The notes under the pieces: generated by a model | The model's database searches: none | Told to the model about the DNA's origin: nothing | Seen by the model: the letters and a program-made list of their open reading frames with translations, nothing else | Assembly (NCBI RefSeq): GCF_006345805.1 | Contig: NC_043002.1 | Span: forward strand, 5,890,001 to 5,954,000 | DNA: 64,000 nt | Source: Octopus sinensis | Taxonomy: Eukaryota | Direction of reading: 5' to 3' | Made by a program: the position numbers and the translations under genes | Shown: positions 2,964 to 46,189 of the stretch, one piece after another | Layout of the letters: each line of letters opens with the position of its first letter | How positions within the stretch are numbered: the first letter of the stretch is position 1

Positions 2964-3056
2964 CTGTATGTATAGACAAAAGAAAGAAGATAATTCTGAT
3001 TGTAGCCATGACAATTTGCTGTGATAGCTAAAGAATCGATCATATATATTACCTGG

Positions 3057-3277: not shown

Positions 3278-3412
3278 TATATTAACTGAGGAAAGTTTAG
3301 AAACCAATGAATTGTTTATATATTGTTTTTTTTTTACGAAATGAGTGAAAGCCTGTGTAAGTAATATTTCTATAGAAGGAAATTGGACGCAGAAACTGTT
3401 TGATATTCAAAC

Positions 3413-3668: not shown

Positions 3669-3717
3669 ATTTGTTTTATTTCAATTTAGCTATGATGGAG
3701 CAGGTTTATGTTTTATC

Positions 3718-3903
3718 TATTTCTTTACTACCCACAAGGGGCTAAACACAGAGGGGACAAACAAGGACAGACAAAGGGGTTAAGTCGATTACATCGACCC
3801 CAGTGTGTAACTGGTACTTAATTTATCGACCCCGAAAGGATGAAAGGCAAAGTCGACCTCGGCGGAATTTGAACTCAGAACGTAACGGCAGACGAAGTAC
3901 CGC
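3718..3903 (-). mobile_element. SINE family B, 5'-truncated
   Basis: Reverse complement of family B body and tail. Confidence 0.85.
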
Positions 3904-4089
3904 TTTGTCAAACTGCGTTTGTGTCCATCTGAGTTTATGTTGATGTTTCGGCTTATTCTCTAAAAAAAAAATGGTATTTGCTGCCCTGGCGGTTTGACAG
4001 ATCGATAAAATAAACATTAAACTAATATGATCGGGGTCGATATGATCGGCTAAAACAGTTAGAGGCAGTGTCCCAGGAAGGCTGCAATC

Positions 4090-4231
4090 ATACATACATA
4101 CGGACATACATACGTACATACATACGTACGTACATACATACATACGTACATACATACATACGTACGTACATACATACATACAACATACATACATACATAC
4201 ATACATACATACATACATACATACATACATA
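4090..4231. repeat. (TACA)n microsatellite
   Basis: Direct inspection; a second (TACA)n lies at about 5090-5240. Confidence 0.95.
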
Positions 4232-5078
4232 CGATGTTTGGTCTTGCTGGATTTTCATAATTGCCACAGCAAGTTGGCATGGTACTCTTCATTGATGGTG
4301 CAGTCCTTTTGAAAATAGCCAATAAACACTATGGCTTTTGTATCCCTCAAAATCTGAGACCATCACCTTCCCTGCGGATGAAACGACCATGACCTTCTTT
4401 AGAGAAAGTGAGGAAGGGTGTTTCAGCCCACATACTGTCATTGTTTCTGGCTCAAAGTGAAGCCAACACTCATCATGGGTTAAGAAACGTTTAAGGAAAC
4501 CAGCTGGATTTGCCTCAAACGATGTCAGATTTTCCTGTTATGAGATAAGCCAGTGCACTTTTGATCAGGTGTCAGAAGACGTGGCGCCCACCAAGCAGAA
4601 ATCTTCGTCATGCCAACTTCATTGTTCAGAATATCCTCAACTCTCTCACAGGATATGCTAACAACATCGGCTATTTGATTTATAATCAATCGCCTGTCTT
4701 CCATCACCATCGATCAATGTTTTCCTCGGCAGTGGCGGTTGCAGGCCGTTCAGACATTGGGTCATCTTCAACGCTCTCCATTCCCTTCCAAAATCCACTG
4801 CCCACTTTTGAACTGTTGATCAAGCTGGGGTGTCATCCCCTAACATAGCAACCATATCAACATGAATGTCTTTGGGGGCTAAACCCTTTTACTGCAGGTA
4901 CTTGATATCATCACGATGCCAAAATTTCAAGAGAAGTCGCCATTAGTTATTTCTGAAGTATTTCTTTGAACAGTCAAATGCCAGTTCACCTGGAATGAAG
5001 CAATGCAGTTATTAAGGAGATCTGGAAAATAATGCCCGCCAGATTTCACAGCATGAACTTTTCAGCCCACATTCGTAC
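4232..5078 (-). mobile_element. Decayed mariner (DD34D-type) transposon, 3'-truncated
   Basis: Peptide MVMEDRRLIINQIADVVSISCERVEDILNNEVGMTKISAWWAPRLLTPDQK (HTH plus WVPRLL-like motif); TIR-like TACGAATGTGGGCTGAAAAGTTC at 5078-5056; frameshifts. Confidence 0.85.
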
Positions 5079-6300: not shown

Positions 6301-7049
6301 AGCCCCTATGTCGGTCGGTCAGTCGGTGGGTCAGGCGGTCGGTGCGTCGACTGACCGGTTAGTCGGTTGGTCAGAGAGTAATTCGAAGCTGTCTTTATTG
6401 GTGTTGGTTACAATTGTTTCACTTCTTCCATCTTCGTACGTATTCGGTGGCGGCGGCGGCGGCGGCATCGGGGCTTCAGGAATTCCTGGGTGATAACTGC
6501 TTATTTGAAAAACCAAAATTGCAAATGTGATCGAATAACGAAAAAAAAAAAAAAAAAAAACCTTACAAAACTTCCCTCTTCTCCTCTTCCCCTCTCCTCT
6601 TCCTCCTCCTCCCTCCTCCTCCTCCCCATCTCCCTCTCAAACAACATCAAGCTGGTCTTGGAAACTTCTGTTGACATGGCAAGTTTCCTAATAGAATAGA
6701 GAGCTTTGTTCAGTTGAAAATGGTTACGCTTTTGTTAAGCTCTTTCTAACAACATTTCCCTGGTCAAACTATTTGCTTCAGAGGATACACACGATCTGAG
6801 ATTAATTATTATTATTATTATTGTCGTTGTCGTTGTAGCTATTGTTGTTGTTGTTGTTGTCGTTTGTTGTTCGCATTCATACAAATACTATATATTATAA
6901 GTTGGTTTTCTCCAGTCGATTCCAATCTTCTCCCCAATATAAATCGCTTCGCTTCGTGGCGGTGACAATGTTATTTTTGTCGACATAGCTTCATTTCGAT
7001 CACTCACACACGTACGCGTGCGCACGCATTCACACACACACAACACACA

Positions 7050-7109
<60 letters not shown>

Positions 7110-7358
7110 GACCTTTTACCACACATGTACCTATATATTTGTGTGAAACAATTACATATAGCGACCTACTCTCTCTCTCCCTCTTTATATGTATATATGT
7201 ATATGTATATACATATATATGTACACACATATTTACATAAACGTATATATATACATACATATATACATATATATTTATGTAGATATATATTAATTTATAC
7301 TTTACATATGTGCGTATATCATATATATTTGTGTGCGTATATACATACATATATACAC

Positions 7359-7389
<31 letters not shown>

Positions 7390-7422
7390 TGTATGTATGT
7401 ATGTATGTATGTATGTATATAC

Positions 7423-7467
<45 letters not shown>

Positions 7468-7525
7468 TATGTATGTATGTATGCAAATCCGTTAGCGTGT
7501 GTATGTGTGCGTTTGTATACACACA

Positions 7526-7565
<40 letters not shown>

Positions 7566-20995: not shown

Positions 20996-21113
20996 ATCAC
21001 AACCTCACGATCGTAAGCTCGACGCTCTAACCACTGAGCCATACGCCTTCACACACACACACACACAGACACAGACACACATACATACATATCTATCTAT
21101 CTATCTATCTATC

Positions 21114-21293
21114 TATTTTTTTATTGCCCACAAGGGGCTAAACATAGAGGGGACAAACAAGGACAGACAAAGGGATTAAGTCGATTACATCGACCCCAGT
21201 GCGAAACTGGTACTTTATTTATCGACCCCGAAAGGATGAAAGGCAAAGGCGACCTCGGCGGAATTTGAACTCCGCTGAGGTCGACTTTGCCTT
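21114..21293 (-). mobile_element. SINE family B, truncated, ending in a short inverted segment
   Basis: Family B tail and body on minus strand, then 23 nt of the body in opposite orientation. Confidence 0.8.
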
Positions 21294-21361
<68 letters not shown>

Positions 21362-22129
21362 CTTCGTGTGTCTTCGTGTCTGTGTTTGTCCACCACCACC
21401 ACCACCACCACCACGGAAAAGGTTGCATGTAGCAATAAGAGAGTGTTGGCAAATAAAAACAATTGTTTAACCAAATTAAACGAGCAATCGATTAGTTAGT
21501 TGGATCTGTAACCAAGTAACTAATTATATAGGAGTGGAATTTGAACTTGTGCGTGTGGTAATAATATTGGGATAATGACCCTCCCGTGACACAACAAAAC
21601 TGTGTAGAAGCCAATCAGATCGATTTTACTTGTCATATGTTGTGCTATACCGATTGTTTGAGAATTACATAAATGGGTACATACGTCTGTGGAATACTCA
21701 GCCACTTGTTAATTTGATGAAACAGCTCAGCTGATTAAACAACTAAATACTTATTGCTGAAACGACAGTGGAGTTTGAACTCAGGACCCAAATAGCCGAA
21801 ACAAATACCGCACAGTATCCAGACAGACGCTCCTACAGTTCCGCAAATGCTCCGTCCTGGATTGTTACTATTTTTTTTTTAAAGGTCCCCGAAAGGATGA
21901 AAGACAAAGTTGACCTCACCGGTATTTGAACTTAGAGTGCAGAGAATCAGAACAAATACACCGAGACATTATATCCGATGCTCGAACATCTCTGCCAATT
22001 CACCGTCCAATACGACCGACTGCATTCGCTCTTAAAAATTTTTAATCGTGTGTTTAAATTAGAAATCATTATTAACGAGGCCAGTGTATTGGGGGAATCG
22101 GTAGAGTGTCTGACTTACGGTATTTAATT

Positions 22130-22605
22130 AAGGCGGTGAGCTGGCAGAATCGTTAGCATGCCAGGCGAGATGCTTTGCGGTATTTCGTCTGCCGCTACGT
22201 TCCGAGTTCAAATTCCGCCGCGGTCGACTTTGCCTTTCATCCTTTCGGGGTCGATTAAATAAGTACCATTTACGCACTGGGGTCGATGTAATCGACTTAA
22301 TCCGTTTGTCTGTCCTTGTTTGTCCCCTCTATGTTTAGCCCCTTGTGGGTAATAAAGAAATTGGTATTTAATTAAGGCGGCGAGCTGGCAGAATCGTTTG
22401 CACGCCAGGCGAAATGCTTTGCGGTATTTCGTCTGCCGTTACGTTCCAAGTTCAAATTCCGCCGCAGTCGACTTTGCCTTTCATCCTTTGGGGGTACCAG
22501 TTACGCACTGGGGTCAATGCAATCGACTTAATCCGTTTGTCTGTCCTTGTTTGTCCCTTCTATGTTTAGCCCCTTGTGGGTAGTAAAGAAATAGGTATTT
22601 AATTA
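22130..22605 (+). mobile_element. Tandem pair of SINE family B with a 12-bp site repeated three times
   Basis: GGTATTTAATTA at 22119, 22363, 22594. Confidence 0.9.
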
Positions 22606-23459
22606 CAGTTATGAGGTCATATCCTGCATCGGGTTAGCTATCTTTAGTCTTCTGGGGATCGATACCAGTCAGATACTAGGGATTGGTTTAAGCGATTATA
22701 ATCTCCCCCAATCAACTGTCGATTTTTAAAAAGATTTGCCGATTGCCTATGAAAAGTCATTAATTAGTATTATAATTATTATTAGTAGTAGTATTAGTAT
22801 TTTAATGTCCGTGGAACGTTAAATAAGAAATTAGTCGAGTCAAATAATGAGTTTTTAATAATGTGGGAGGAACGGTTTCGGTTGTTGTTCTTCTTATTCT
22901 TAGTTTAATAACATTTATTTTTAGTTATATTTATTGTTGACTTATTTACAGTTAGTGTTCAGGGGGAGATAAAGAGACCAAATAAATAAATAAATAAAAG
23001 TGGGAAGGAAAGACTGTATGAGAGGCCCCCCCGTTTGAATTCTGTAGGCGGGGTTAGCGAATTCTCTCGTTCACTGACCCCAGTAACCTGTTTAGTTTTG
23101 TTTCCATGCACACTTAACCCAATCAAACGACCTCCATTTCTGTAGATGCACACTAGCATCGACTGCTGTTACAAGTCCTTCTCTCTTTCCGTGAGTTAAT
23201 CACTAATTGCCTTGCAGATTCTAATTAAATGTCTATGATCACTCATAGATGTTATTGCATTAATATTTCATAATACGTCTACTTCCCTCCAATTGAACGC
23301 TTCCCTGCTCTTTATTTAGCTTAAAAGCTAAAACTAGAACCAAAGCCATCTCGACTCTTTACCCCCCACCTCTCTCTCTCGTTCTTTCTTTCTTTCTTTC
23401 TTTCTTTCTCTCTGTCTTATGTTAATGGTAAGAACAGCAGTGGCAATGTGACGATGTGG

Positions 23460-24350
23460 CACACTCTTCTAGTACAGGCAGTACTGTGGAAGGTAGAGGC
23501 GGTGATGGCGGTGTCGGCGTTGCTGTGAAGATAGTATAATGGTAGTGGTGGTGCTGGTGGTGGTGGTGATGAGAGTAGTGAATGACTGTGGTGGTGGTGG
23601 TGGTGGCGGCGATAGTGTTGATAGGTTGTAATGGTGATTAAGGTAATGGTACTCGTAGTGTGGACGACAGCGATGGTGATGGCAGCCATGTTACTGCTGT
23701 TGTTGTTGTTGTTGTTGTGGTAGGCATTATATAGGTGATGGTGCTCCTGGTGGTGGGGATAGTGGTTGTGCGATGGTGGTGACGGCGGCGACGAGTCGGT
23801 TTGCAGTGGTGGTAGTTGTGTTGAAAAAGCGAAGATAACATTGGTTGGTAGCGACATATATATATATATATGTATATATGTATATAGATATATAGATAGA
23901 TGGATAAATAGATAGATAGAGAATTGGGGTAGGCAAGGTAAATGGGGTGAGAAGTGACAGACATGATGCTGGGGGGAGGGCGGGGAGCGGGGGGGGGCAA
24001 TGATAATCTTCAATTGACTGGACGTAGTCAGCACGCGAACTCTTCATGTCAAGTTCTGTAGATAGGAGTTATGGCGGGGGGCGTGTTTCTTCAAACGGCT
24101 TTTTCTGTGGTTTGTTGTTTTAGTTATTATTGTCGTTGCCGTTGCTGTCGTCGTCGTTGTTGTTGTTGTTGTCTGGGCGTTCTTGGCCAGCCCGTGTTAA
24201 ACACTGTTCACGTTATTGCGATGATGATGATGATGATGACGATAACGAAGATGACTATGATGATGATGATGATGGCATTCAAAGAAGGTATGTTAGCGGT
24301 GGCGGTGGTGGTGTTGGCGTTGGTGGCGGCGGTGGTGGTGGTGGTGGTGT
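23460..24350. repeat. GGT/GAT/GTT low-complexity tract
   Basis: Mixed triplet repeats; ORFs are compositional artefacts. Confidence 0.8.
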
Positions 24351-24822
24351 GCCAGTTTACTGCTGATTAAAGGATATTTCATTGTCAAACATCACGAATC
24401 GAAGATCTATCGTGCCAAATGACCCTAACATGTGTCCACTGAAGCCCGTACAAGCGTTGAAGAACAACAGATGATTAAGTTGGCTTCTTGATAGTGGAAA
24501 GAGAGTTTGATCGAAATAGAGAGTAAGGAGGAAGTGGGGCAGGAAGAACAGGTTTAGGTGGGCGCATGGTATGGTAGAGAGAAGGAACGGAAAGCATGTA
24601 GAAGCAGCCACGATATAAATGAAATACCAATTGTTTAAATTATTTGTTTCCTATTTTCAGCTTTTATTTGTGAAACAAAGAAAAATTATTCAATATTTTT
24701 ATATTTTTAAAGACATTGTTTTTTTTTTTTACTCCCTTCCTTTTTGTTACTCTTCTTCTTCTCTCCCACCTCTTCGCAATTCTTGTCAAATTTTCTGATT
24801 AGAATCTAAATTGTTAACTTAC

Positions 24823-25846: not shown

Positions 25847-26883
25847 GTAAGCTGCTTAGAATAAAATGCATCTTATATCAAACATTGACTGATATACCGT
25901 TTAATATTCATTTTAATTCGCTTGGGAAAGAGTATAAATGGTGTAAGTGAAGTTAACTTGCTTTTTCTACTAAAGGGAAAAAAAGATAGAAAATAAAGGA
26001 TAAAATCATTTCACTTATAATGAATTGTCAAAATACCTGACAACTAATTTAAATCAAATCAATAGATTTGATTTAAATTAATTACAAATTACTCAAAACT
26101 TTAAATGAGGTTTTCTTCTTTAGTATTGCTGAAGTTTAAAAAGGAACCTTACCTCTACCAACATAATAAACTATTAAAATTAGCAAGGAAGTTTAAAGCA
26201 AACAAACAATACTTTTGTTAAGTTATGGAACTTTCAAGGACGAGAACTAGAAAATTAAAGAGCTGACTACCTAAATTAAGTGGATCCGCAATCAGAAATC
26301 GAAAGCAGGCGCGAACTGTTTTGTCAAAATCTTATTGGTGTGTCACGGTCGTCACCCTTCACGGAAAAACGACAACTTTACATAGATGTATAAAATGTTT
26401 GAGCTTTAGTTATAGGAGAGGGAAGAAAACAATAAGTGAGGTTTCTGTGATATTCATATAATTTTAAGAATGGTTTTAGTAACTGGGAATTAAACCCCGG
26501 GAGCGAAAACAAAAGATAGAATTAATTATAAATTAAAATAAAATTATATTGTTGTTTAATTGACTTCTCCCGCAAAAGTTTACTATAAAGGGAAGTAAAC
26601 TATTTCTTCCTATACAAACCTCAAGGTTTGGCTCATTCCTGATTACAATAACGAAAATACTTCGAGCTGTGTAGTTTACCTACCATTGTCATTGGCAAGC
26701 AGCATTTATTAATACTGACACTATTTCACCTAAAGCAAGAATGGAGGATCGAGAGTAGATGTTCATGTTTTTTTTTTCTAATTATCATTACTGAACTTTT
26801 TCTCATTTCATAGTCACGTTTACTCTGTTATTGATACTGATTTTTTTTTTATTTCGATTATCTTTTGTGATATGAATTTTGTT

Positions 26884-27468
26884 TTAGAGCAAATTTCTGA
26901 GATCAGCTGGTAAAGGAAGATCAATGAATGGCTGCACTCCTGAAGCTATAGCAAATTTGTCGGCTCTAGTCTTTATGAATATAAGGAGTCGGTTGCTTCT
27001 AAACCGATTAACGGTGGATCGGTCCGAGTCTTTTGCCGCTAATAGGGTGTCGTAGCGTAGCCACGAATAACTATTCGGATAGGTATTCGTATACAAATAG
27101 ATCCGGCAATTCAGCAACGTAGCGAGAGCTTGAAAGATAACATCTAAATCGATTGTTCTCCCAGAGCTAAGATTTTTCAATGCAGTGTTGGGATTCATAC
27201 TATGCCAGTTGAAATTGAGGTTTCGAAAGATGTCCACAAATGTTGTCAGCAATAGACGGAATTTGAGGAAATGATCTTCGTTTCCCGTCAAAATTTTGCT
27301 CACAACGCGAAATAGTGAATTCACGCCGGTCACCTCGGCATACGTAACCGTTCTGTCCGCTAAATCTATACGAGTGCGTCCAATTGTAGGGCATATAATG
27401 AAGTCAGTGAACTGTTTTCTTCTTCCTCTCCGATTTCTCGTCGTGTGATAAGGTGTATTAGCATCCAT
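26884..27468 (-). CDS. OTU-like (ovarian tumour protease fold) protein, 194 aa, catalytic residues apparently lost
   Basis: Longest ORF in the window not made of repeats; OTU-like motifs in order: VTGVNSLFRVVSKILTGNEDH (cf. GDGNCLFRA.S..LTG.ED.H), FQALATLLNCRIYLY, SWLRY, LLIFIKTRADKF (cf. IYL....NHF/Y). Confidence 0.75.
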   Translation of the reverse strand: MDANTPYHTTRNRRGRRKQFTDFIICPTIGRTRIDLADRTVTYAEVTGVNSLFRVVSKILTGNEDHFLKFRLLLTTFVDIFRNLNFNWHSMNPNTALKNLSSGRTIDLDVIFQALATLLNCRIYLYTNTYPNSYSWLRYDTLLAAKDSDRSTVNRFRSNRLLIFIKTRADKFAIASGVQPFIDLPLPADLRNLL

Positions 27469-27687
27469 CGATATAAAGAATGAAATCTGTAGTCTCTCGC
27501 AATTATTTAAAATAATAATAGTAATAAATTACGAAGCTTTGTTTAAAAAAAAAATCAACGTTTGAAAACGACTGATCTTGATGCAAACAGCATCAACAAC
27601 CTTCAAGAATTATTACTTTAAACAAAACTGTTGCTGTGGTCGAAATTTCGCTTACCTCGGCAAAGATTCAAAAAGCAGGTTTGTCTT

Positions 27688-27699
27688 TATGACGTCATA
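27688..27699. promoter_or_regulatory. Full CRE palindrome upstream of the OTU-like ORF
   Basis: TATGACGTCATA containing consensus TGACGTCA, about 220 nt upstream of the ATG. Confidence 0.4.
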
Positions 27700-27844
27700 G
27701 TGATCAGTTTCTCTTTGTAGCATTTTAATTAATAAAGGAAGCTGATAGATTGGTTTGCAATTTAAACCTAATGATTTCTTATGTTGGTACAAGGAGTACC
27801 GTTGATTTATTCGATTTCTTCCTTACTCTAGTAGAATATGTAAG

Positions 27845-28312
27845 GCAGGTTTCAAATTTTGTCACAAGACCTGCAGTTTGGAGGCGGTGGTGGTGAGTTG
27901 ATCACATCGACACCAGTGTTCAACTGGTACTTAATTAATCGACCCCGAAATAATGAAAGACAAAGTCAACCTCAATGGAATTTGAACTCAGAACTTAAAA
28001 CCGGACGAAATACCTATTTCTTTACTACCCACAAGGGGCTTAACACAGAGAGGACAAACAAGGACAGACAAACGGATTAAGTCGATTATATCGACCCCAG
28101 TGCGTAAGTGGTACTTAATTTATCGACCCCGAAAGGATGAAAGGCAAAGTCGACCTCGGCGGAATTTGAATTCAGAACGTAACAGCAGACGAAATACCGC
28201 AAAGCATTTCGCCCGGCGTGTTAACGTTTCTGGCAGCTCACCGCCTTATGCCAGCTCGCTGGACGAAATACCGTTAAGAATTTTGTCCGGTGTGCTAATG
28301 ATTCTGCCAGTT
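27845..28312 (-). mobile_element. Cluster of SINE family B copies and fragments
   Basis: Variant-tail copy 27845-28010, standard copy 28014-28250, head fragment to 28312. Confidence 0.8.
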
Positions 28313-29087
28313 TTTTGCTTTAGTAGAGTGTAAGACAGCAAGCGAAGTCGATCTTGATGGTTTTGTAACTCGAGAATATAGAAATATGAAAGAGATTCAC
28401 CTTGCGCTTTTCTATTTCTAGTAAGTTACCACTTATCAAACTATTATAAGTAGTTTCGATTTGCATGTTTTATCGTTGTCCCGGGTCACGTCTGATTAAG
28501 CAGACCTATGATCAAAACATATTGCAACAGCGATCATTTCGTCCTATCTGTGTTCTATATACAGTATATTTAAGATCATATTCATGTTTTTAAGGTGGTA
28601 GGGTGTAAGTTAAGATATATTGAACTGCTATTTCGAGCAACAACGTAGTTTTGTGATGACGAACCTGTACTCCACATGTTGGCTGTAACACGCCATAAAT
28701 GTTTAGGTAACACGTGATGGACTTTGAAGAAGAATTTCTTGCAATACACGTAAGTGACACTGTAATATCAGGATTGTTAAAGAAACTAAAAGTTCAGCAT
28801 GTTGGGCTAAAAGGTTTTGCCATCATCGGCGTAAAGTCTCTCTCCATTCTGTGTTTATTATTGCTTGTGTTCAACGTTATGTTGTATCTTCATGCAAAGA
28901 AATTTAGAATTACCTCACAAATTGCGTTGTGTTGACAGTTTTCTGTGCAAGATCTCTGTTGCTATTTCGCTGAACCACTAAGTTACAGCGCGTAAACAAG
29001 CAGACATGGTGCCAAGCGGTGATATGCAAAAACTACACACACACACACACATGTATGTGTGTGTGTGCGAGCTGGCAGAAATGTTAG

Positions 29088-29295
29088 CACGCCGGGCGAA
29101 ATGCGTTGCCGTATTTCGTATGCCGCTACGTTCTGAGTTCAAGTTCCGCCGAGGTCGACTTTGCCTTTCATCCTTTCGGGGTCGATAAATTAAGTACCAG
29201 TTACGCACTGGGGTCGATGTAATCGACTTAATCCGTTTGTCTGTCCTTGTTTGTCCTCTCTGTGTTTAGCCCCTTGTGGGTAATAAAGAAATATG

Positions 29296-29326
<31 letters not shown>

Positions 29327-29472
29327 TTCTTTACTACCCACAAGGGGCTAAACACAGAGAGGACAAACAAGGACAGACAAACGGATTAAGTCGATTACAT
29401 CGACCCCAGTGCGTAACTGGTACTTAATTTATCGACCCCGAAAGGATGAAAGGCAAAGTCGACCTCGGCGGA
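29088..29472. mobile_element. Tail-to-tail inverted pair of SINE family B
   Basis: Plus copy 29088-29293, minus copy 29324-29472, separated by about 30 nt of (TA)-rich sequence. Confidence 0.9.
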
Positions 29473-30730: not shown

Positions 30731-31263
30731 CAACAACAGCAGCTGTATCGTGCAGAATGTTTTTATTCCGTTCGTCCTTATGATAGATAACCTTCAACAC
30801 AATGAATGAAGTCGTTTACTTTACTCTGACCATGCTTTTTGTCGAGTAGTTTACACTGTAGGATATCAAAGACATTTCCAGCCAGAGAAAGAATGTTATG
30901 AAAGCAATTGATAAAAAACGTGAATGTGAAATCATTCAATGTTGGCAAAAGATTGTCTGTTTGACAAGTGTAGCTTCATCCCCAGAGCCTAGAATACTTG
31001 TGAAGGCATTTTTCCAAGCTTTCATGCAATAGTTTTAAGGCTGACACAGTTCTTGATCTATAGCAACCTATTTCTTTCGCACAGGGATGGAATACTGACA
31101 TTAAATTGCCTGAAAACGTTTTTTCTGCTCGGTACTGGAAGATGTAAATTTACTAAATAAGAAAAAAAACATTTTTACTCCACTCATTTTCTCGGCACTT
31201 TTACTCAAGACTAAGTTAAGTTTATGCGCATAGCAGTGAATGAAGAGCGCATGTTTAAATCCT

Positions 31264-31490
31264 TATTTCTTTATTGCCCACATGGGGCTAAACATAGAGG
31301 GGACAAACAAGGACAGACAAAGGGATTAAGTCGATTACATCGACCCCAGTGCGTAACTAGTACTTAATTTATCGACCCCGAACGGATAAAAGGCAAAGTC
31401 GACCTCGGCGGAATTTGAACTCAGAACGTAGCGGCAGACGAAATACCGCTAAGCATTTCGCCCGACGTGCTAACGTTTCTGCCAGCTCGC
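31264..31490 (-). mobile_element. SINE family B
   Basis: Reverse complement of near full-length family B. Confidence 0.85.
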
Positions 31491-31494
31491 TGCC

Positions 31495-31680
31495 TTGCAT
31501 GTTTAAATCCTTTATCTTTTGCTTGCTCTGTACTCCGTTTAGCATTCCTGCCATTACAGCTGCTCCATCGTATGTCTGGCTCACTAATTTATCTGTAGCG
31601 TCACTGAAGGAATTCAACGCATTTGAGATCACATCAGACAGTCTTGTAGTACTTTTATCATCACTGACTCCATAGAATCC
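31495..31680 (-). mobile_element. hAT transposase central fragment
   Basis: DKLVSQTYDGAAVMAGMLNGVQSK, the Q.YDGA..M.G...GVQ motif of ZMYM1-like hAT transposases. Confidence 0.8.
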
Positions 31681-33880: not shown

Positions 33881-35085
33881 ATCTAGCTGAGTAAAAAGTA
33901 AGCAACGTTTTGAAACATGAAATTCATCACAATATATTTCAACAGAGCGAAAATTTTATTCGTCAAAGTACCATTACAATCAACATATTTTTGTTAACGA
34001 GATACGAATTTGTTTATTCCGGTAACATAAAAATCTGGAGTTCTGGAGCTGAGGAACTCTTTGAATGCACTTTCAGCATCGGTTTGATATTTGAGCTTCT
34101 TCTCTCACAGAAAACCATCAAGGTGCTTGAAAAAGTGGTAGTCGGTAAGAGAAAGATCTGGGGAAAAAGCTGGGTGGGGAAGAACTTTGTAGCCAAGTTC
34201 CTTCAACATCTGGAGCGTCATTAGTGAAACGTGTGGTCGAGCATTGTCATGAAGAATGACTGGCCTTCTTCTGCTGACCAGTCTGCGACGGAGAAGTAGC
34301 AGTTTTTCGTTCATTTTGGCAAATTCATGGCAATATGTTTCTGCAGTAATAGTTTTTCCGGGTTTTAAGAAGTTATAGTGGATGAGTCCAGTAGTACACC
34401 ACCAAACAGTCACCATAATCTTCTTTTTGAAGAGCTCGGGTTTAGAGAAGGTTTTCGGTACTTCATTTTGGTTCAACCATCGCGAAGAACATATTTTGTT
34501 ATGGATTGGTCTGGTTATAGAGAAGAAGCGACGAGCAAATTTCATATCTGCACATTTTCTGATTTTCATTCAAATCGTGTGGTACACATTTGTCGAGCTT
34601 TCTTGATTTTCCGATCGCATGCAAATGGTTGCTGGCAGTTTTCTGGCTAACTTGAAATTCTTTTGCCAGTTCACGAGTGGTTTTACGTGAATCTTTCTTA
34701 ATGACGGTCTTTAATTGATCGTCATCGATGACAGATGGGCGTCCACTACGCTCACGATCTTCAAGGCTCAGGTCTCCACTGTGAATTCGTTTAAACCATT
34801 TTCTCACCAAACGTTTCGTTTCAGCTGCTTTACGTCCTTTTTTGAAGTTAAATAGCAAAATTGTACGAATATCGCGCTTTGAGAGTTCCATTTCAGATGA
34901 TTGTAACAACGGTGAAAAAAACATCAATGTTGATTTATTGATGCGTTTGGGCAAGTCTATGTCTGTATTATCAGACAATTGCAAACAAATGCTTAAAAAA
35001 ATTCAAAACTCTGCAAAAATCCGGTACAAATTCTTCATGGTTCGAAACGTTACACTATTTCTTCAGATCGGCTACTACCTATTTA
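33881..35085 (-). mobile_element. Mariner DD34D transposon (Hsmar1/Mos1-like), near full length, decayed
   Basis: MELSKRDIRTILLFNFKKGRKAAET, RSGRPS, CVPHDL, MVTVWW, HDNARPH...FSPDLSLTDYHFF with 34-residue spacing; degenerate TIR cores AACGTTT(T/C)GAA(A/C)CATGAA at both ends. Confidence 0.92.
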
Positions 35086-37973: not shown

Positions 37974-39410
37974 GCATGGTTTTTTCTTTATTATAGGCAT
38001 GTAGCCTGAATATAGAATGGGCATTACAATTACATACAAAACAATACAAAATTTGGGGCACATAAAAGAAATAATGAATCTGAGATGAGTTCTGTGTAAT
38101 GGGAAATGGAATGGTTTACGAGTCCCCCCAGCTCGCAGTTTCGTTTTACAGTTCCTTATACATTTTGTAATACAGTTTGTAATTGTTCTATTTATTTATC
38201 AGTTATAAATTCAATTACGTCATCCAGTCCAATCACGTTGGACAAATTATCAGAACGAATATATAGTTGAGTTATTTTAATCTTTTCTTTAAATGTCTCT
38301 ACTAATTTATCCATTTTTTCTTTTTCCACTAACACCGCTCTATAGCTTGGTTGGATGTTGTAGCATCATCAGAACTTGCGATGACGAAAGAGTACTGCTG
38401 AATATTTACCGTAGTTTAGCCGTCTTAGTAACTAGAATATGTTTGCTTAATTATGTAAGTTATTTTCCTACAAATTTGTGAGAATTGTGATACATATTTT
38501 ATTATAATGAACTGCCAGTAAACACAAGCAACACAGTACGATAAGAATCATATTTACAATGCAAATAGATATTTTACTTATATTTATTAAAACTTATAAA
38601 ACATGAGAAAATATGAACTATTTTTGTATGATAAAAGTGAGAATGTTAAAACCATTTTTAATATATTACTTTCAAAGCGCCACCAAAAACCATTACTGAC
38701 TTATCATAACGTAACGCTCATCAAATTCACTGTCGCTGTATCTTCAACCATGCCCTCCTCCTCGGGATCCTCAATGCCATCTGAGTCAGAGGTGTCTGAA
38801 TCCTCATATAAAAAGCCATCATCTGCACTATCGAGAGAATTGCTATTGTCTTTGTTTTAACTGCACCCCAAGCATTTTCCAGCAACTGGTAAACTTGAAC
38901 TGTTGTAGGCTTCTTCATCCGGCCTGTTGGTGTTTGCTCAGATTGGAGTATTATCCATTTGTTCTGTTCTTTACGCATATCGTCATTAAGATTTATTGAT
39001 AATCCAGAGGTTGCAGTTGATCTCCATGTATTACAGCCACTTGAATGTTTAATCTGTTTATTCTACTCTTGATGGATTTTGTTACACGAGCCCGGAACTG
39101 ATTCAACATAACAAGCGATGGCTTTTGACAAGTCTACCGAGAAACCATGACCCCATTGTTTCTAACCAGAGTCTTATTCCATCCTCATCCATCCATCATC
39201 TAGAGTGAACATGGATGATAATACCCGGTGGAATATTTTCTTTCGGCATTGTTTTCCGTTTGAATATGAGCAAAGGTGGTAATTCGGTGTTACCAGTGCA
39301 GGCCAATGCACATGTAAAATGTCATTTCTCACGACCGGAGGTTTTGATAGCCACAGTTTTGTTATCTTTCACGTCAACACACTTATTGGTCAGTATATGA
39401 AACCTCACGA

Positions 39411-39633
39411 AGGCGGCGAGCTGGCAGAATCGTTTGCACGCCGGGCGAAGTGCTTAACAGTATTTCGTCTGCCGTTACGTTCTGAGTACAAATTCGACTT
39501 AGCCTTTCATCCTTTCGGGGTCGATTAAATAAGTACCAGTTACGCACTGGGGTCGATATAATCGCCTTAATCCGTTTGTCTATCCTTGTTGGTCCTCTCT
39601 GTGTGTAGCCCCTTGTGGGTAGTAAAGAAATAG
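39411..39633 (+). mobile_element. SINE family B with 18-bp TSD
   Basis: GTATATGAAACCTCACGA at 39393-39410 and 39634-39651. Confidence 0.93.
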
Positions 39634-40259
39634 GTATATGAAACCTCACGAGAGCTTTATCCATATTTGCAATGTGTCCCAGTTCAATATTTGTTGTTTT
39701 TCTGATATTTAAAGCAAATCGATGAAACTCACCAGTTTTGATTTCATACTCTGCTATTTTTTTGGTGCTGTTTTTGTTTTTGTTCGCATGGCTAATCCGT
39801 TTCGTTTTATGAATCTTTAGTACCACCTGGCGGCACCAGAAAAATCATTATGAGCTCCTGCAGCCGCTCATACTTTGGTATCGTAAATGATTTGTTTCGC
39901 CGACGCTGCAAATATCTTGGCTTCGTTGATTTGAAACCCAGGTCTTTATCTCATTCCATCCATTTAGGTTTCGGTTTGCGAAGGTGCTGTTTAGGTCTTC
40001 CTGTTTGCTGAAGTTTCTTTTCTTGTTTACGCCAATCACAGACCATATTCTCTGTAGGGAGAGGCCTGAAATGCCTTGCAGCAGCTCGGTTGCCATGTTC
40101 CTTTGCGAATGTTACTACCTGCAGTTTATAAGTAACTCTGTAGGCATGTCGTATCGTTGACTCCGTAATGGGATTTTGATAATTTTAAAATTTGTCTGCG
40201 TAAGCGCTGGCAGTCGCCGGTACACTGAGACCGACGTCATAACCACCAAAACAAATACC

Positions 40260-40499
40260 TATTTCTTTACTACCCACAAGGGGCTAAACACAGAGAGGAC
40301 AAACAAGGATAGACAAACGTATTAAGTCGATTACATCGATCGACCCCAGTGCGTAACTGGTACTTAATTTATCGACCCCGAAAGGATGAAAGGCAAAGTC
40401 GACCTCGGCGGAATTTGAACTCAGGACGTAACGGCAAACGAAATACGGCTACGCATTTCGCCCGGCGTGCTAACGTTTCTGCCAGCTCGCCGCCTTACT
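40260..40499 (-). mobile_element. SINE family B with 15-bp TSD
   Basis: ACCAAAACAAATACC at 40245-40259 and 40500-40514. Confidence 0.93.
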
Positions 40500-41838: not shown

Positions 41839-42010
41839 TTATTTCTTTACTACCCACAAGGGGCTAAACACAGAGGGGACAAACAAGGACAGACAAACAG
41901 ATTAAGTCGATTACAGTACCAGTACTTAATTTATCGACCCCGAAAGGATGAAAGGCAAAGTCGACCTCGGCGGAATTTGAACTCAGAACGTAACGGCAAA
42001 CGAAATACGA
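41839..42010 (-). mobile_element. SINE family B, truncated
   Basis: Reverse complement of family B tail and body. Confidence 0.8.
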
Positions 42011-42501: not shown

Positions 42502-43287
42502 ATGTATGTATGTGTGTATGTATGTATGTGTGTATGAATGTATGTGTGTATGAATGTATGTATGTATGTATGTATGTATGTGTGTATGAATGTATCTATG
42601 TATGTATGTATGTATGAATGTATGTATGTATGTATGTATGTGTGTATGAATGTATGTGTGTATGAATGTATGTATGTATGTATGTATGTATGTGTGTATG
42701 AATGTATGTATGTATGAATGTATGTATGTATGTATGTATGTATGTGTGTATGAATGTATGTGTGTATGTATGTATGTATGTATGTATGTATGTGTGTATG
42801 AATGTATGTGTGTATGAATGTATGTATGTATGTATGTGTGTATGAATGTATGTGTGTATGTATGTATGTATGTATGTATGTATGTATGTATGTGTGTATG
42901 AATGTATGTATGTATGTATGTATGTATGTGTGTATGAATGTATGTGTGTATGAATGTATGTATGTATGTATGAATGTATGTATGAATGTATGTGTGTATG
43001 TATGTATGTATGTATGTATGTATGTGTGTATGAATGTATGTATGTATGTATGTATGTGTGTATGAATGTATGTGTGTATGAATGTATGTATGTATGTATG
43101 TATGTGTGTATGAATGTATGTGTGTATGTATGTATGTATGTATGTGTTGATGATGTATGGTGTATGAATGTATGTATGTATGTATGTATGAATGTATGGT
43201 ATGTATGTATGTATGTATGTATGTATGAATGTATGTATGTATGTATGTATGTATGTATGTGTGTATGAATGTATGTGTGTATGTATG

Positions 43288-43319
<32 letters not shown>

Positions 43320-45398
43320 TGTGTGTATGAATGTATGTATGTATGAATGTATGTATGTATGTATGTATGTATGTGTGTATGAATGTATGTGTGTATGAAT
43401 GTATGTATGTATGTATGTATGTGTGTATGAATGTATGTATGAATGTATGTATGTATGTATGTATGTATGTGTGTATGAATGTATGTATGTATGTATGTGT
43501 GTATGAATGTATGTGTGTATGAATGTATGTATGTATGTATGTATGTGTGTATGAATGTATGTATGTATGTATGTATGTATGAATGTATGTATGTATGTAT
43601 GTATGTGTGTATGAATGTATGTGTGTATGAATGTATGTATGTATGTATGTATGTGTGTATGAATGTATGTATGTATGAATGTATGTATGTATGTATGTAT
43701 GTATGTGTGTATGAATGTATGTGTGTATGTATGTATGTATGTATGTATGTATGTGTGTATGAATGTATGTGTGTATGAATGTATGTATGTATGTATGTGT
43801 GTATGAATGTATGTGTGTATGTATGTATGTATGTATGTATGTATGTATGTATGTATGTGTGTATGAATGTATGTATGTATGTATGTATGTATGTATGTGT
43901 CTATGAATGTATGTATGTATGTATGTATGAATGTATGTGTGTATGTATGTATGTATGTATGTATGTGTGTATGAATGTATGTATGTATGTATGTATGTAT
44001 GTATGTGTGTATGAATGTATGTATGTATGTATGTATGTATGTGTGTATGAATGTATGTGTGTATGAATGTATGTATGTATGTATGAATGTATGTATGAAT
44101 GTATGTGTGTATGTATGTATGTATGTATGTATGTATGTGTGTATGAATGTATGTATGTATGTATGTATGTGTGTATGAATGTATGTGTGTATGAATGTAT
44201 GTATGTATGTATGTATGTATGTGTGTATGAATGTATGTGTGTATGTATGTATGTATGTATGTATGTGTGTATGAATGTATGTGTGTATGAATGTATGTAT
44301 GTATGTATGTATGAATGTATGTATGTATGTATGTATGTATGTATGTATGTATGTATGTATGTATGTATGTATGTATGTATGTATGTATGTATGTGTGTGT
44401 GTATGCATGCATGTATGTATGTATGTATGTATGTGTGTGTGTGTATGTATGTATGTATGTATGTATGTATGTATGTACGAATGTATGTATGTATGTATGT
44501 ATGTATGTATGTATGTATGTATGTATGTATGTATGTATGTATGAATGTATGTATTGTATGTATGTATGTATGAATGTATGTATGTATGTATGTATGAATG
44601 TATGTATGTATGTATGTATGAATGTATGTATGTATGTATGTATGTATGTATGTATGTATGTATGTATGTATGTATGTATGTATGTATGTATGTATGTATG
44701 TATGTGTGTGTATGCATGCATGTATGTATGTATGTATGTATGTATGTGTGTGTGTATGCATGCATGTATGTATGTATGTATGTATGTATGTATGTATGAA
44801 TGTATGTGTGTATGTATGTATGTATGTATGTATGAATGTATGTATGTATGTATGTATGTATGAATGTATGTATGTATGTATGTATGTATGTATGTATGTA
44901 TGTGTGTGTGTATGCATGCATGTATGTATGTATGTATGTATGTATGTATGTGTGTGTGTATGTATGTATGTATGTATGTATGTATGCATGTATGTATGTA
45001 TGTATGTATGTATGAATGTATGTATGTATGTATGTATGTATGAATGTATGTATGTATGTATGTATGTATGAATGTATGTATGTATGTATGTATGAATGTA
45101 TGTATGTATGTATGTATGTATGAATGTATGTATGTATGTATGTGTGTGTGTATGCATGCATGTATGTATGTATGTATGTATGTGTGTATGAATGTATTGT
45201 GGATGAATGTATGTATGTATGTATGTATGATGTATGTATGTATGTATGTATGTATTATGTATGTATGTAGTATGTATGTATTATATGTATGTATGTATGT
45301 GTGTGTGTATGCATGCATGTATGTATGTATGTATGTGTGTGTGTGTGTATTATGTGTGTATGTATGTATGTATGTATGTATGTACGAATGTATGTATG

Positions 45399-45430
<32 letters not shown>

Positions 45431-46188
45431 TGTATGTATGTATGTATGTATGAATGTATGTATGTATGTATGTATGTATGTATGAATGTATGTATGTATG
45501 TATGTATGAATGTATGTATGTATGTATGTATGTATGTATGTATGTATGTATGTATGTATGTATGTATGTATGTATGTATGTATGTATGTGTGTGTATGCA
45601 TGCATGTATGTATGTATGTATGTATGTATGTGTGTGTGTATGCATGCATGTATGTATGTATGTATGTATGTATGTATGTATGAATGTATGTGTGTATGTA
45701 TGTATGTATGTATGAATGTATGTATGTATGTATGTATGTATGAATGTATGTATGTATGTATGTATGTATGTATGTATGTATGTATGTGTGTGTGTATGCA
45801 TGCATGTATGTATGTATGTATGTATGTATGTATGTGTGTGTGTATGTATGTATGTATGTATGTATGTATGCATGTATGTATGTATGTATGATGTATGAAT
45901 GTATGTATGTATGTATGTATGTAATGTATGAATGTATGTATGTATGTATGTATGTATGAATGTATGTATGTATGTATGTATGAATGTATGTATGTATGTA
46001 TGTATGAATGTATGTATGTATGTATGTGTGTGTGTATGCATGCATGTATGTATGTATGTATGTATGTATGTATGTATGTGTGTGTGTGTATGTATGTATG
46101 TATGTATGTATGTATGCATGTATGTATGAATGTATGAATGTATGTATGTATGTATGAATGTATGTATGTATGTATGTATGTATGAATG
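42502..46188. repeat. 3.7-kb compound (TATG)n satellite with TGAA, TGTG and TGCA variants
   Basis: Direct inspection; source of the 919- and 1237-aa spurious ORFs. Confidence 0.95.
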
Positions 46189-46189
46189 T

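What the first reader, a model, noticed from the sequence alone, without database searches (positions are those of the whole stretch)
26884..27468. Intact OTU-fold gene with both catalytic residues replaced: candidate pseudo-deubiquitinase
Seen: an uninterrupted 194-codon non-repetitive ORF in a window where the transposon ORFs are broken. OTU motifs occur in the right order, but the nucleophile position is Ser (TCA, 27316-27318, in GVNSLFR), the GDG Asp is absent, and the His position appears to be Lys (AAA, 26956-26958, in ADKF). Each change needs at least two substitutions from Cys/His codons, so sequencing error is unlikely. A basic N-terminal patch (RNRRGRRK) could be an NLS. Established: OTU proteases use a Cys-His-Asp/Asn triad; inactive OTU proteins (OTULINL/FAM105A) exist; OTU domains also travel in Helitron-type elements and viruses. 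Inference: a lineage-specific, possibly TE- or virus-derived, non-catalytic ubiquitin-binding or scaffold protein. The His alignment is by eye and less certain than the Cys.
Basis: partly seen in the sequence, partly recalled or inferred. Interest (0 to 1): 0.75.

Follow-up and report, generated by a model that had tools for sequence, protein, structure and literature searches.

The report
Octopus OTU-fold gene lacking catalytic triad
A small, intact octopus gene encodes a protein with the fold of an OTU deubiquitinase but with Ser, Lys and Ala in place of the catalytic Cys, His and Asp/Asn; it is kept by purifying selection, so it is a real, previously unclassified probable pseudo-enzyme and not transposon debris.

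Summary
Window 26884-27468(-) is an uninterrupted 194-codon ORF, unique within the window. Pfam does not recognise it, but a family profile hits only OTUD5/OTUD1 in PDB. hhalign to canonical OTU proteins gives 99.2% probability. An AlphaFold model (pTM 0.62) returns only OTU domains among the top 50 Foldseek hits.

S51 (TCA, 27316-27318) lies in the catalytic-Cys column. K171 (AAA, 26956-26958) lies in the His column and A173 in the Asp/Asn/Glu column. The protein has no His after residue 89.

The gene is under purifying selection:
- dN/dS is 0.34 against another octopus-like sequence (0.25 for the core).
- dN/dS is 0.05 within a distant clade that also has Ser+Lys (44% identity).
- dN/dS is 0.075 within a paralogous Ser+His clade.
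- The Ser is kept through all four TCN codons.

No transposon protein domains or repeats cover the locus, and no viral structure match beats the cellular ones.

Best reading: a lineage-restricted, probably non-catalytic OTU pseudo-enzyme with a basic, NLS-like N-terminus and a conserved DLPLP tail. A Ser-Lys hydrolase is not excluded. Expression, binding partners and the taxa of the distant homologues remain untested.

The parts
26884..27468 (-). Complete 194-codon CDS (ATG to TAA) of the OTU-fold protein. It appears to be a single coding exon.
   Evidence: Full-length 194-aa homologues at 94% and 89% identity. No indels in the CDS, while the flanks carry indels. dN/dS 0.34, p=0.001.
27307..27330 (-). 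Degenerate Cys loop T47-G-V-N-S-L-F-R54, corresponding to canonical G-D-G-N-C-L-F-R. The Asp is lost and there is a one-residue insertion.
   Evidence: Alignments. HMMER alignments to OTUD5 and OTUD1. N50 is invariant and R54 nearly invariant (90% or more) in the 20-sequence alignment.
27316..27318 (-). Ser51 codon (TCA) at the position of the catalytic Cys.
   Evidence: Ser is kept in all three clades using TCA, TCG, TCC and TCT.
26956..26958 (-). Lys171 codon (AAA) at the position of the catalytic His.
   Evidence: MAFFT alignments. Global hhalign pairs DKF with [E/N]H[F/Y]. It sits just before strand 172-175 of the model's beta hairpin. Lys is kept as AAA or AAG in the 44%-identical clade.
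26950..26952 (-). Ala173 codon (GCT) at the position of the third triad residue (H-x-D/N/E in canonical relatives).
   Evidence: Ala, Ser, Ala, Ala in the Lys clade; Tyr in the Ser+His paralogues.
27415..27438 (-). Basic patch R11-N-R-R-G-R-R-K18 in a predicted disordered N-terminal tail; candidate nuclear localisation signal.
   Evidence: The distant clade has RRRPKKSNRKRNK at the same place. pLDDT is below 50 for residues 1-38. The NLS function is an inference.
26908..26922 (-). Conserved C-terminal D183-L-P-L-P187 motif beyond the OTU core; possible short linear interaction motif.
   Evidence: Identical in the octopus sequences and in the 44%-identical clade. There are zero non-synonymous changes in residues 177-194.
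27690..27697 (-). TGACGTCA (CRE-like palindrome) 222-229 bp upstream of the ATG; candidate promoter element.
   Evidence: Present at -232 in L001, -180 in L003 and at -192 and -176 in L010. The L003/L010 similarity begins at this motif.
27487..27655 (-). Candidate 5'-UTR intron, based on motifs only: donor GAG|GTAAGC at 27656/27655 and acceptor CTACAG| at 27487.
   Evidence: Read directly from the sequence. Both motifs are kept in L001. L003 and L010 have a polypyrimidine tract plus AG directly before the ATG. No transcript evidence.
26416..27756 (-). Extent of the single-copy locus that aligns colinearly (89%) with the homologous contig L001.
   Evidence: It is unique within the window, and a SINE-like repeat starts at about 27848.

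Best explanation
This is a real, lineage-restricted protein-coding gene in an octopus genome (94% identical to the Octopus bimaculoides protein A0A0L8HUG8). Its product has three parts: a roughly 135-residue OTU-fold domain (about residues 41-176), a disordered basic N-terminal tail, and a short conserved DLPLP C-terminal tail. All three residues of the OTU Cys-His-Asp/Asn triad are replaced (Ser51, Lys171, Ala173), and the Asp of the DGNC Cys loop is lost. It therefore cannot carry out thiol-based isopeptide cleavage.

The most likely mode of action is non-catalytic. The preserved OTU scaffold would serve as a binding module for ubiquitin or a ubiquitin-like protein, an E2~Ub conjugate, or another partner. 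The basic tail would direct it to the nucleus or nucleic acid, and the DLPLP tail would recruit a partner. In short, a pseudo-deubiquitinase acting as a reader, decoy or scaffold.

Shown: gene integrity, homology, fold, residue replacements and purifying selection. Inferred: absence of catalysis, the nature of the ligand, and localisation.

The confidence given (0.65) is for the whole statement including 'non-catalytic'. For the shown part alone (a real OTU-fold gene without the canonical triad) it is about 0.9.
For: Gene reality:
- Full-length 194-aa homologues exist.
- The CDS is 92.5% identical with no indels, against 88% and 85% with indels in the flanks.
- dN/dS is 0.34, p=0.001, and 0.25 for the core.
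- The 44%-identical clade has dN/dS 0.052 at dS 0.93, p=8e-27. The paralogous clade has 0.075, p=4e-22.

OTU homology and fold:
- In the exhaustive search, six of the seven hits weaker than P0004 (P0005-P0011) are PF02338 proteins above the gathering score; the seventh, P0005, is the Ser+His paralogue.
- The PDB profile search hits only OTUD5 and OTUD1.
- hhalign gives 99.25% probability.
- The AF2 model has pTM 0.62, and all of the top 50 Foldseek PDB hits are OTU domains, best TM 0.64.

Triad loss:
- Alignments place Ser51, Lys171 and Ala173 in the triad columns.
- There is no His after residue 89, and the only Cys residues are 26 and 121.
- There is a gradient of degeneration. The paralogue clade keeps DGN-S plus His but has Tyr at the third position. 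The Lys clade has also lost the DG, the His and the acid. This is the pattern expected once catalysis has gone.

Precedent: OTU-class pseudo-DUBs exist (OTULINL with Asp139/His350/His352; PMC7862380), and about 13% of DUBs are pseudo-DUBs (PMC10919355).
Against: - No biochemical or expression data exist.
- The nucleophile position is never a non-nucleophile. Ser is maintained through synonymous codon turnover in all three clades, and the base position is always His or Lys. That is more conservation than a dead active site strictly needs, although it could be structural.
- OTULINL, the closest precedent, does not bind ubiquitin, so ubiquitin binding cannot be assumed.
- The model's confidence is moderate (mean pLDDT 61; 56-69 around the His loop). 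Its alignment included canonical OTUs, which favours the OTU fold.
- dN/dS among octopus-like sequences (0.34) is looser than in the distant clade.
Confidence: 0.65

Rival explanations
1. It is an active hydrolase that has switched chemistry. Ser51 would be the nucleophile and Lys171 the general base (a Ser-Lys dyad, as in signal peptidase I, LexA and Lon). The paralogous clade would use Ser-His. The OTU scaffold would then cleave an isopeptide, peptide or ester bond without a thiol.
For: - The two replacements are exactly the pair that forms known Ser-Lys dyads (own knowledge of clans SF and SJ).
- Ser is retained in three clades with four different TCN codons. Lys is retained as AAA or AAG across 44% identity. 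The paralogue keeps His as CAC or CAT.
- N50 is invariant and R54 nearly invariant in the Cys loop.
- There is strong purifying selection.
- The literature warns that some 'pseudo-DUBs' turned out to be active, such as USP53 and USP54 (PMC12037411, seen; discussion in PMC10919355).
Against: - To my knowledge no papain-like or OTU protease naturally uses Ser, and engineered Cys-to-Ser OTUs are inactive substrate traps (own knowledge).
- The Cys loop that builds the oxyanion hole is altered by loss of Asp and an insertion.
- The stepwise decay of active-site residues between paralogues looks like relaxation, not a redesigned site.
- The Lys alignment has only moderate confidence.
- The geometry was not testable.
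Confidence: 0.13
2. Its origin is a domesticated transposon-borne or virus-borne OTU domain, of the kind carried by Ginger1 transposases and animal Helitrons, captured as a host gene. This concerns origin and is compatible with the best explanation for function.
For: - OTU domains occur in Ginger1 transposases, including in the mollusc Aplysia, and in animal Helitrons (PMC2836005; PMC11417382 and PMC4067079, listed).
- The nearest canonical relatives are short OTU-only ORFs from large eukaryotic assemblies. One cluster has 19 members on many contigs, and one relative is fused to zf-CXXC.
- The gene has an intronless CDS and lies in TE-rich DNA.
Against: - The locus is single-copy in the window and has no terminal repeats around it.
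- There is no transposase, Rep/helicase, integrase or RT domain within about 7 kb.
- Only one copy per species was recovered from 5.8 and 1.84 billion-protein libraries.
- Viral structure matches are no better than human OTUDs.
- The apparent multi-copy locus L008 is a 99-100% fold-back duplication, probably an assembly artefact.
Confidence: 0.25
3. It is a decaying transposon fragment or pseudogene whose open frame survives by chance.
For: - ORF length alone is only modestly improbable (3 of 200 shuffles).
- The surrounding DNA is repeat-rich, with broken mariner and RT remnants.
- There is a 0.18 probability that 44 random substitutions introduce no stop.
Against: - dN/dS is significantly below 1 in three independent comparisons, down to 0.05 at dS 0.93.
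- There are no indels in the CDS while the flanks have many.
- Start, stop region and length are conserved across 44% identity.
- A conserved upstream motif is present.
Confidence: 0.03
4. The OTU resemblance is coincidental, and the protein belongs to an unrelated alpha/beta fold.
For: - Pfam gives no hit at E<=10, and single-sequence PDB search finds nothing.
- The first AF2 model was uninformative, with pLDDT 37.
- The second model's alignment contained canonical OTUs.
Against: - The profile search of PDB returns only OTU domains.
- Library-wide E-values of 2e-4 to 7e-4 go to proteins that independently pass the PF02338 gathering score.
- hhalign gives E 5.6e-20 over 119 columns.
- Motif order and secondary-structure order match OTU.
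Confidence: 0.02

Closest known systems
OTUD-type OTU deubiquitinases (human OTUD1, OTUD3, OTUD5/DUBA; Pfam PF02338)
   Same: They are the best structural matches (4bou, 4bop, 3tmp; TM up to 0.64 normalised to target) and the only PDB profile hits. The element order is the same: Cys-loop helix, helical arm, central sheet and C-terminal beta hairpin carrying the His position. The conserved N-x-L-F-R, LTG-ED and W-x-R-Y motifs are shared.
   Different: Cys is replaced by Ser, His by Lys and the third residue by Ala. The DG of DGNC is lost with a one-residue insertion. There is an insertion of about 13 residues before the His hairpin. The protein falls below Pfam detection. It also has an extra basic N-tail and a DLPLP C-tail.
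OTULINL / FAM105A, the characterised OTU-class pseudo-deubiquitinase
   Same: It has an OTU fold with a disrupted triad (Asp139/His350/His352) and no DUB activity, and is thought to act through protein-protein interactions (PMC7862380).
   Different: It is not orthologous: no OTULIN or OTULINL sequence or structure appears among the sequence or top structural hits. The substitutions differ: OTULINL keeps His, whereas this protein keeps a hydroxyl nucleophile and replaces His with Lys. OTULINL has a membrane-targeting motif, whereas this protein has a basic NLS-like tail. OTULINL does not bind Ub, so Ub binding cannot be transferred by analogy.
OTUB1 non-catalytic inhibition of E2 enzymes (own knowledge)
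   Same: It is a precedent that an OTU domain plus an N-terminal extension can act stoichiometrically, independently of its catalytic Cys, by binding E2~Ub and free Ub.
   Different: OTUB1 retains an intact triad. No specific sequence similarity to otubains was seen: Peptidase_C65 matched only the canonical relatives and only below threshold. 2zfy ranks only 30th.
Transposon-borne OTU domains (Ginger1 transposases, animal Helitrons/Helentrons)
   Same: They are small OTU domains dispersed in invertebrate genomes, including molluscs (PMC2836005). The closest canonical relatives found here are short stand-alone OTU ORFs, some of them multi-copy.
   Different: This locus has no associated transposase or Rep-helicase, no terminal repeats and no additional copies. 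It is under host-gene-like purifying selection. TE OTUs keep the catalytic Cys and His.
Ser-Lys dyad hydrolases (signal peptidase I, LexA/UmuD, Lon; own knowledge)
   Same: They use the same pair of residue types that occupy the nucleophile and base positions here.
   Different: Their folds are unrelated, and there is no evidence that Ser51 and Lys171 are in contact or activated. This is only a chemical analogy.

Membership tests
OTU superfamily (Pfam PF02338 / MEROPS C85-like fold) | Sequence match to the PF02338 profile at the gathering score | tested here: not met
   There was no Pfam hit at E<=10 for the window protein. Among 8 family members only 2 touch PF02338, with best E=0.13.
OTU superfamily (Pfam PF02338 / MEROPS C85-like fold) | Detectable homology to bona fide OTU domains by profile methods | tested here: met
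   In the exhaustive hmmsearch the weaker hits P0006-P0011 all pass PF02338. The family profile against PDB hits only OTUD5 and OTUD1, E 0.0045-0.0084. hhalign gives 99.25% probability, E 5.6e-20, and the local re-run gives 98.2%.
OTU superfamily (Pfam PF02338 / MEROPS C85-like fold) | OTU three-dimensional fold | tested here: met
   The AF2 model has pTM 0.62 and a core pLDDT of about 65-85. All of the top 50 Foldseek PDB hits are OTU domains, best E 1.3e-5 and TM 0.64. Caveat: confidence is moderate and the alignment contained canonical OTUs.
Active OTU deubiquitinase | Catalytic Cys at the N-terminus of the first core helix (DGNC motif) | tested here: not met
   The residue is Ser51 (TCA) in the window, and Ser in all 3 clades.
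Active OTU deubiquitinase | Catalytic His at the start of the C-terminal strand (H-[FY]-x motif) | tested here: not met
   Lys171 lies in the His column. There is no His anywhere after residue 89.
Active OTU deubiquitinase | Third triad residue (Asp/Asn/Glu two residues after His, or the Asp of DGNC) | tested here: not met
   Ala173 lies at His+2, and TGVNS replaces GDGNC.
Active OTU deubiquitinase | Isopeptidase activity on Ub or Ubl conjugates | not testable with these tools
   This needs recombinant protein, probes and diUb panels.
Pseudo-deubiquitinase (OTU class, e.g. OTULINL) | DUB fold retained with catalytic residues lost | tested here: met
Pseudo-deubiquitinase (OTU class, e.g. OTULINL) | Maintained as a functional gene (purifying selection, conservation) | tested here: met
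   dN/dS is 0.34, 0.052 and 0.075 in three comparisons.
Pseudo-deubiquitinase (OTU class, e.g. OTULINL) | Demonstrated lack of catalytic activity and a non-catalytic role | not testable with these tools
   This is a biochemical question. Orthology to OTULINL itself is not supported.
Ser-Lys dyad hydrolase | Ser O-gamma and Lys N-zeta within hydrogen-bond distance in a substrate cleft | not testable with these tools
   Model coordinates are not exposed, and the His-loop pLDDT is only 56-69.
Transposable-element-encoded OTU (Ginger1 / Helitron) | Physical linkage to a transposase or Rep-helicase, terminal repeats, multiple copies | tested here: not met
   The locus is unique in the window. No flanking TIR or LTR specific to it was found. 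No TE domains lie within about 7 kb. The whole genome was not searchable.

The most novel reading that the evidence does not exclude
The family is not dead but is a natural OTU-fold hydrolase that has exchanged its Cys-His pair for Ser-Lys (Ser-His in the paralogous clade). That would make it the first serine-nucleophile member of the OTU/papain-like deubiquitinase fold, possibly acting on an ester-linked or non-ubiquitin substrate in cephalopods.
Probability: 0.12. Interest if true: 0.8.

Novelty: new member of a known kind. Interest (0 to 1): 0.42.

Why it matters
Pseudo-enzymes of the ubiquitin system are few, and only one OTU-class example (OTULINL) has been characterised. This is an independent and much smaller OTU pseudo-enzyme family that databases list as uncharacterised with no domain. 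It shows that standard Pfam annotation misses it.

The family offers a natural series: DGN-Ser plus His in one paralogue, then Ser plus Lys in the other. That series can be used to study how an OTU active site decays or is repurposed. The strict retention of a hydroxyl nucleophile makes a simple, cheap probe experiment informative either way.

For genome annotation, it separates a genuine host gene from the surrounding transposon debris in a repeat-rich cephalopod region.

Tried and rejected
1. Direct Pfam, NCBIfam and single-sequence PDB searches found nothing useful.
2. The first AF2 model, built from 3 near-identical sequences, had pLDDT 37 and was unusable.
3. P0004 was the best non-family hit in the exhaustive search (E 1e-6). 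It was rejected as an artefact: five repeat stretches of at most 12.7 bits summed together, and no OTU domain.
4. TE context: ORFs within about 7 kb have no Pfam domains. The nearest TE proteins are a split mariner at 34105-34984 and a zf-RVT fragment at 48731-49231. Self-BLAST and tblastn found no second copy in the window.
5. L008 appeared to carry three OTU ORFs. These are 99-100% inverted duplicates, probably a fold-back assembly artefact, so it is uninformative about TE origin.
6. Viral origin: BFVD matches are generic OTU domains (baculovirus VP80, nairovirus L, iridovirus) and no closer than human OTUDs.
7. Synteny between the window and L010 or L004: only the gene itself matches.
8. 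Expression from the Logan contigs: contig ends are not diagnostic, there is no poly(A), and no spliced 5' part could be mapped. Inconclusive.
9. Taxon identification for SRR11869391/94, ERR14857105, ERR12921339/40, SRR9969974 and ERZ21867824 through the paper library found nothing.
10. RNA editing as a rescue (own knowledge of coleoid A-to-I recoding): A-to-I can turn TCA only into TCG (Ser). It can turn AAA only into Lys, Arg, Glu or Gly codons, never Cys or His. Rejected.
11. Alternative catalytic residues: the only His are at 8, 66 and 89 and the only Cys at 26 and 121, and none is conserved across the clades.
12. Rfam and tRNA scans of 24-31 kb found nothing.
13. The exact window protein and P0001 are not on record in the contig index.
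Full report
**1. What is in the sequence**

The minus strand of 26884-27468 carries an uninterrupted 194-codon ORF from ATG to TAA.
- GVNSLFR, with Ser51 = TCA at 27316-27318.
- ADKF, with Lys171 = AAA at 26956-26958.
- RNRRGRRK at residues 11-18.

The window is AT-rich eukaryotic DNA (about 37% G+C). The best protein hit is the Octopus bimaculoides uncharacterised protein A0A0L8HUG8, which is 94% identical, has the same 194 residues, and carries no precomputed Pfam domain. The window is therefore from an Octopus-like genome.

ORF length alone is only moderately unusual. In 3 of 200 shuffles of the window, a stop-free run of at least 194 codons appeared.

**2. It is a real gene under selection**

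A second full-length homologue (P0002, 89% identity) lies on 1.4-kb contigs L001 and L002. The window aligns colinearly with L001 over 26416-27756. Within that alignment:
- The CDS is 92.5% identical with no indel columns.
- The 5' flank is 88.1% identical with 13 gap columns.
- The 3' flank is 85.3% identical with 43 gap columns.

Nei-Gojobori dN/dS is 0.34 (dS 0.165; binomial p=0.001). By region:
- The core, residues 41-176, has a ratio of 0.25.
- The 18-residue C-tail has no replacement.
- The N-tail changes fast but keeps its basic cluster.

The exhaustive profile search of 1.84 billion representatives found only 10 proteins at E<=1e-3. One of them, P0003, is 44% identical. Its true ORF is 188 aa, because the gene caller read through TGA codons.

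A relative of P0003, P0016, lies on a 406-kb contig (L010). Between L003 and L010, dS is 0.93, dN is 0.048 and omega is 0.052 (p=8e-27).

A third clade is represented by P0005 and P0033 (182 aa, about 24% identity). It has omega 0.075 at dS 0.87 (p=4e-22). P0016 and P0033 come from the same assembly, ERZ21867824, so the second and third clades are paralogues within one organism.

The 'decaying TE fragment' alternative is therefore rejected.

**3. It is an OTU-fold protein, but only profile and structure methods show it**

Pfam, NCBIfam and single-sequence PDB searches are negative or meaningless. Only two family members touch PF02338, with best E=0.13. Positive evidence comes from four sources:
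- P0006-P0011, the remaining weak hits of the exhaustive search apart from P0005, pass PF02338 on their own (E 1e-9 to 2e-12). They carry GDGNCLFR where the query has TGVNSLFR.
- A profile of the Ser-bearing family, searched against all PDB sequences at E<=10, returns only OTUD5 (3tmo, 3pfy) and OTUD1 (4bop), with E 0.0045-0.0084. Ser aligns to the catalytic Cys.
- hhalign of the family against the canonical hits gives 99.25% probability and E 5.6e-20 over 119 columns. A local re-run gives 98.2%.
- An AlphaFold2 model built on a 20-sequence alignment reaches pTM 0.62, with pLDDT of about 65-85 across residues 41-145 and 160-176. All 50 top Foldseek PDB hits are OTU domains. OTUD3 (4bou) is best at E 1.3e-5 with TM 0.64 normalised to target, followed by OTUD1, OTUD5, nairovirus vOTUs, OTUD2, Cezanne, A20, Otu1 and OTUB1.

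Two caveats apply. The alignment contained canonical OTUs, and the model's confidence is only moderate.

The best non-family hit, P0004 (E 1e-6), is an artefact. It sums five weak repeat matches of at most 12.7 bits each.

**4. The active site**

In every alignment, Ser51 occupies the Cys column. It sits at the N-terminus of helix 49-61, as the OTU nucleophile does.

Lys171 falls in the column of the catalytic His of P0006 (DHF), P0010 (NHY), P0011 (EHF) and P0034 (NHY) in two MAFFT runs. Global hhalign also pairs them, though with low local confidence. Lys171 directly precedes the second strand of the C-terminal hairpin (strands 161-166 and 172-175), where OTUs carry the His.

Ala173 occupies the His+2 position, where the canonical relatives have Asp, Glu or Asn. 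The Asp of DGNC is lost, with a one-residue insertion giving T-G-V-N-S.

Independently of alignment, the protein has His only at residues 8, 66 and 89, and Cys only at 26 and 121. None of these is conserved across the clades. Canonical thiol catalysis is therefore excluded.

A-to-I RNA editing is abundant in coleoids (own knowledge), but it cannot regenerate Cys or His from TCA or AAA.

**5. Pattern across clades**

| Position | Lys clade, four loci | Ser+His paralogue clade, two loci |
|---|---|---|
| Nucleophile | Ser: TCA, TCA, TCG, TCC | Ser: TCT, TCC |
| Base | Lys: AAA, AAA, AAA, AAG | His: CAC, CAT |
| Third residue | Ala, Ser, Ala, Ala | Tyr |

The paralogue clade still has K-D-G-N-S. 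The residues have been held through synonymous turnover, so selection is acting on the residues themselves.

The order of losses cuts two ways. It runs from Cys-to-Ser plus loss of the acid, to additional loss of His and DG. That looks like progressive relaxation of a dead site. On the other hand, the nucleophile and base positions are never occupied by chemically inert residues. This keeps a Ser-Lys or Ser-His hydrolase reading alive (about 0.12).

**6. Surroundings**

The interval from about 26100 to 27847 is unique in the window. A SINE-like element of about 240 bp with many copies starts at about 27848. No ORF within about 7 kb has a Pfam domain. The nearest TE proteins are a split mariner transposase (34105-34984) and a zf-RVT fragment (48731-49231). 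Rfam and tRNA scans of 24-31 kb are empty.

Upstream, a TGACGTCA palindrome lies at 27690-27697, that is 222-229 bp before the ATG. The same motif occurs at -232 in L001, -180 in L003, and -192 and -176 in L010. The L003/L010 similarity starts exactly at this motif, even though dS is 0.93. I read this as a conserved promoter element, which is an inference.

Two further motifs suggest a 5'-UTR intron: GAG|GTAAGC at 27656/27655 and CTACAG| at 27487. L003 and L010 also have polypyrimidine-AG tracts abutting the ATG. There is no transcript evidence.

All clades start at the same Met-Asp (or Met alone in the paralogue), so the ORF appears to be the whole protein.

**7. Mechanism proposed**

Shown:
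- An OTU scaffold is retained.
- The triad is replaced.
- Selection is strong.
- The basic N-tail is conserved in character (RRRPKKSNRKRNK in the distant clade).
- The DLPLP tail is invariant.

Inferred: the protein acts stoichiometrically as a binding module, serving as a reader, decoy or scaffold for Ub/Ubl, E2~Ub or another partner. It is probably nuclear.

Precedents are the OTU pseudo-DUB OTULINL (PMC7862380), pseudo-DUBs in general (PMC10919355), and the Cys-independent E2 inhibition by OTUB1 (own knowledge). Because OTULINL does not bind ubiquitin, the identity of the ligand is open.

**8. Origin**

OTU domains are known cargo of Ginger1 and Helitron elements, including in a mollusc (PMC2836005). 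The closest canonical relatives are short stand-alone OTU ORFs, some of them multi-copy. However, nothing at this locus is TE-like. L008's 'copies' are a fold-back artefact, and viral matches are generic. A TE or viral origin is possible (about 0.25) but unsupported.

**9. Verdict**

This is a new, tiny, lineage-restricted family within a known kind, the OTU-class pseudo-enzymes. Interest is moderate. It would rise sharply if the Ser/Lys pair proved to be catalytic.

The following remain undone because the tools do not allow them: expression, biochemistry, taxon assignment of the distant homologues, and active-site geometry.

Noticed in passing
window 42502-46189: A 3.7-kb (ATGT)n microsatellite with about 926 copies at 88% match. 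It explains the extreme GC skew (0.76-0.92) and the spurious 919-1237-aa ORFs listed there.
   Followed up: partly
window 27848-28248, 22129-22612, 29069-29472, 31255-31496, 40253-40497, 3059-3283, 3714-3903, 21110-21272, 39410-39637, 41840-42008, 53316-53740 and others: A SINE-like repeat of about 240 bp has at least 15 copies in 64 kb at 76-98% identity. Its copies generate short ORFs such as 'WYLIYRPRKDERQSRPRRNLNSER'. One copy starts 380 bp upstream of the OTU gene. ARAGORN finds no tRNA-like head.
   Followed up: partly
window 29145-29472: A near-perfect palindrome: 164-nt arms, 98% complementary, with zero spacer. It is formed by two head-to-head copies of the SINE-like repeat (I5).
   Followed up: no
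window 34105-34984 (-): A mariner/Tc1-type transposase remnant is split into two overlapping ORFs. One matches HTH_48, HTH_32 and HTH_Tnp_IS630, and the other matches Transposase_1 with E 5e-23.
   Followed up: partly
window 48731-49231 (-): An ORF fragment carries the zf-RVT domain (E 3e-10), so it is a non-LTR retrotransposon remnant.
   Followed up: no
window 27690-27697; L001 82; L003 497; L010 about 9809 and 9825: A TGACGTCA (cAMP-response-element-like) palindrome is conserved 176-232 bp upstream of the ATG in both Ser+Lys clades. It is absent upstream of the Ser+His paralogues.
   Followed up: partly
L003 677-1309; L010 10001-10594: The database proteins P0003 (210 aa) and P0016 (197 aa) are over-extended because the gene caller read TGA as sense. 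The real ORFs stop at ...DLPLPTRE* and ...DLPLPTRT*.
   Followed up: yes
L008 249-1085 vs 2169-3005; 3805-4907 vs 6440-7542: The contig carrying canonical OTU relatives consists of 99-100% identical inverted duplications. This is probably a long-read fold-back assembly artefact and not true multi-copy genes.
   Followed up: partly
window 23417-24370: A GGT/GTT-rich low-complexity tract produces 100-205-aa ORFs on both strands with no Pfam match.
   Followed up: no
P0009 (234 aa, ENA contig of 1.1 Mb): One canonical relative fuses a zf-CXXC domain (E 2e-11) to the OTU domain. This architecture is worth checking for a TE or chromatin link.
   Followed up: no
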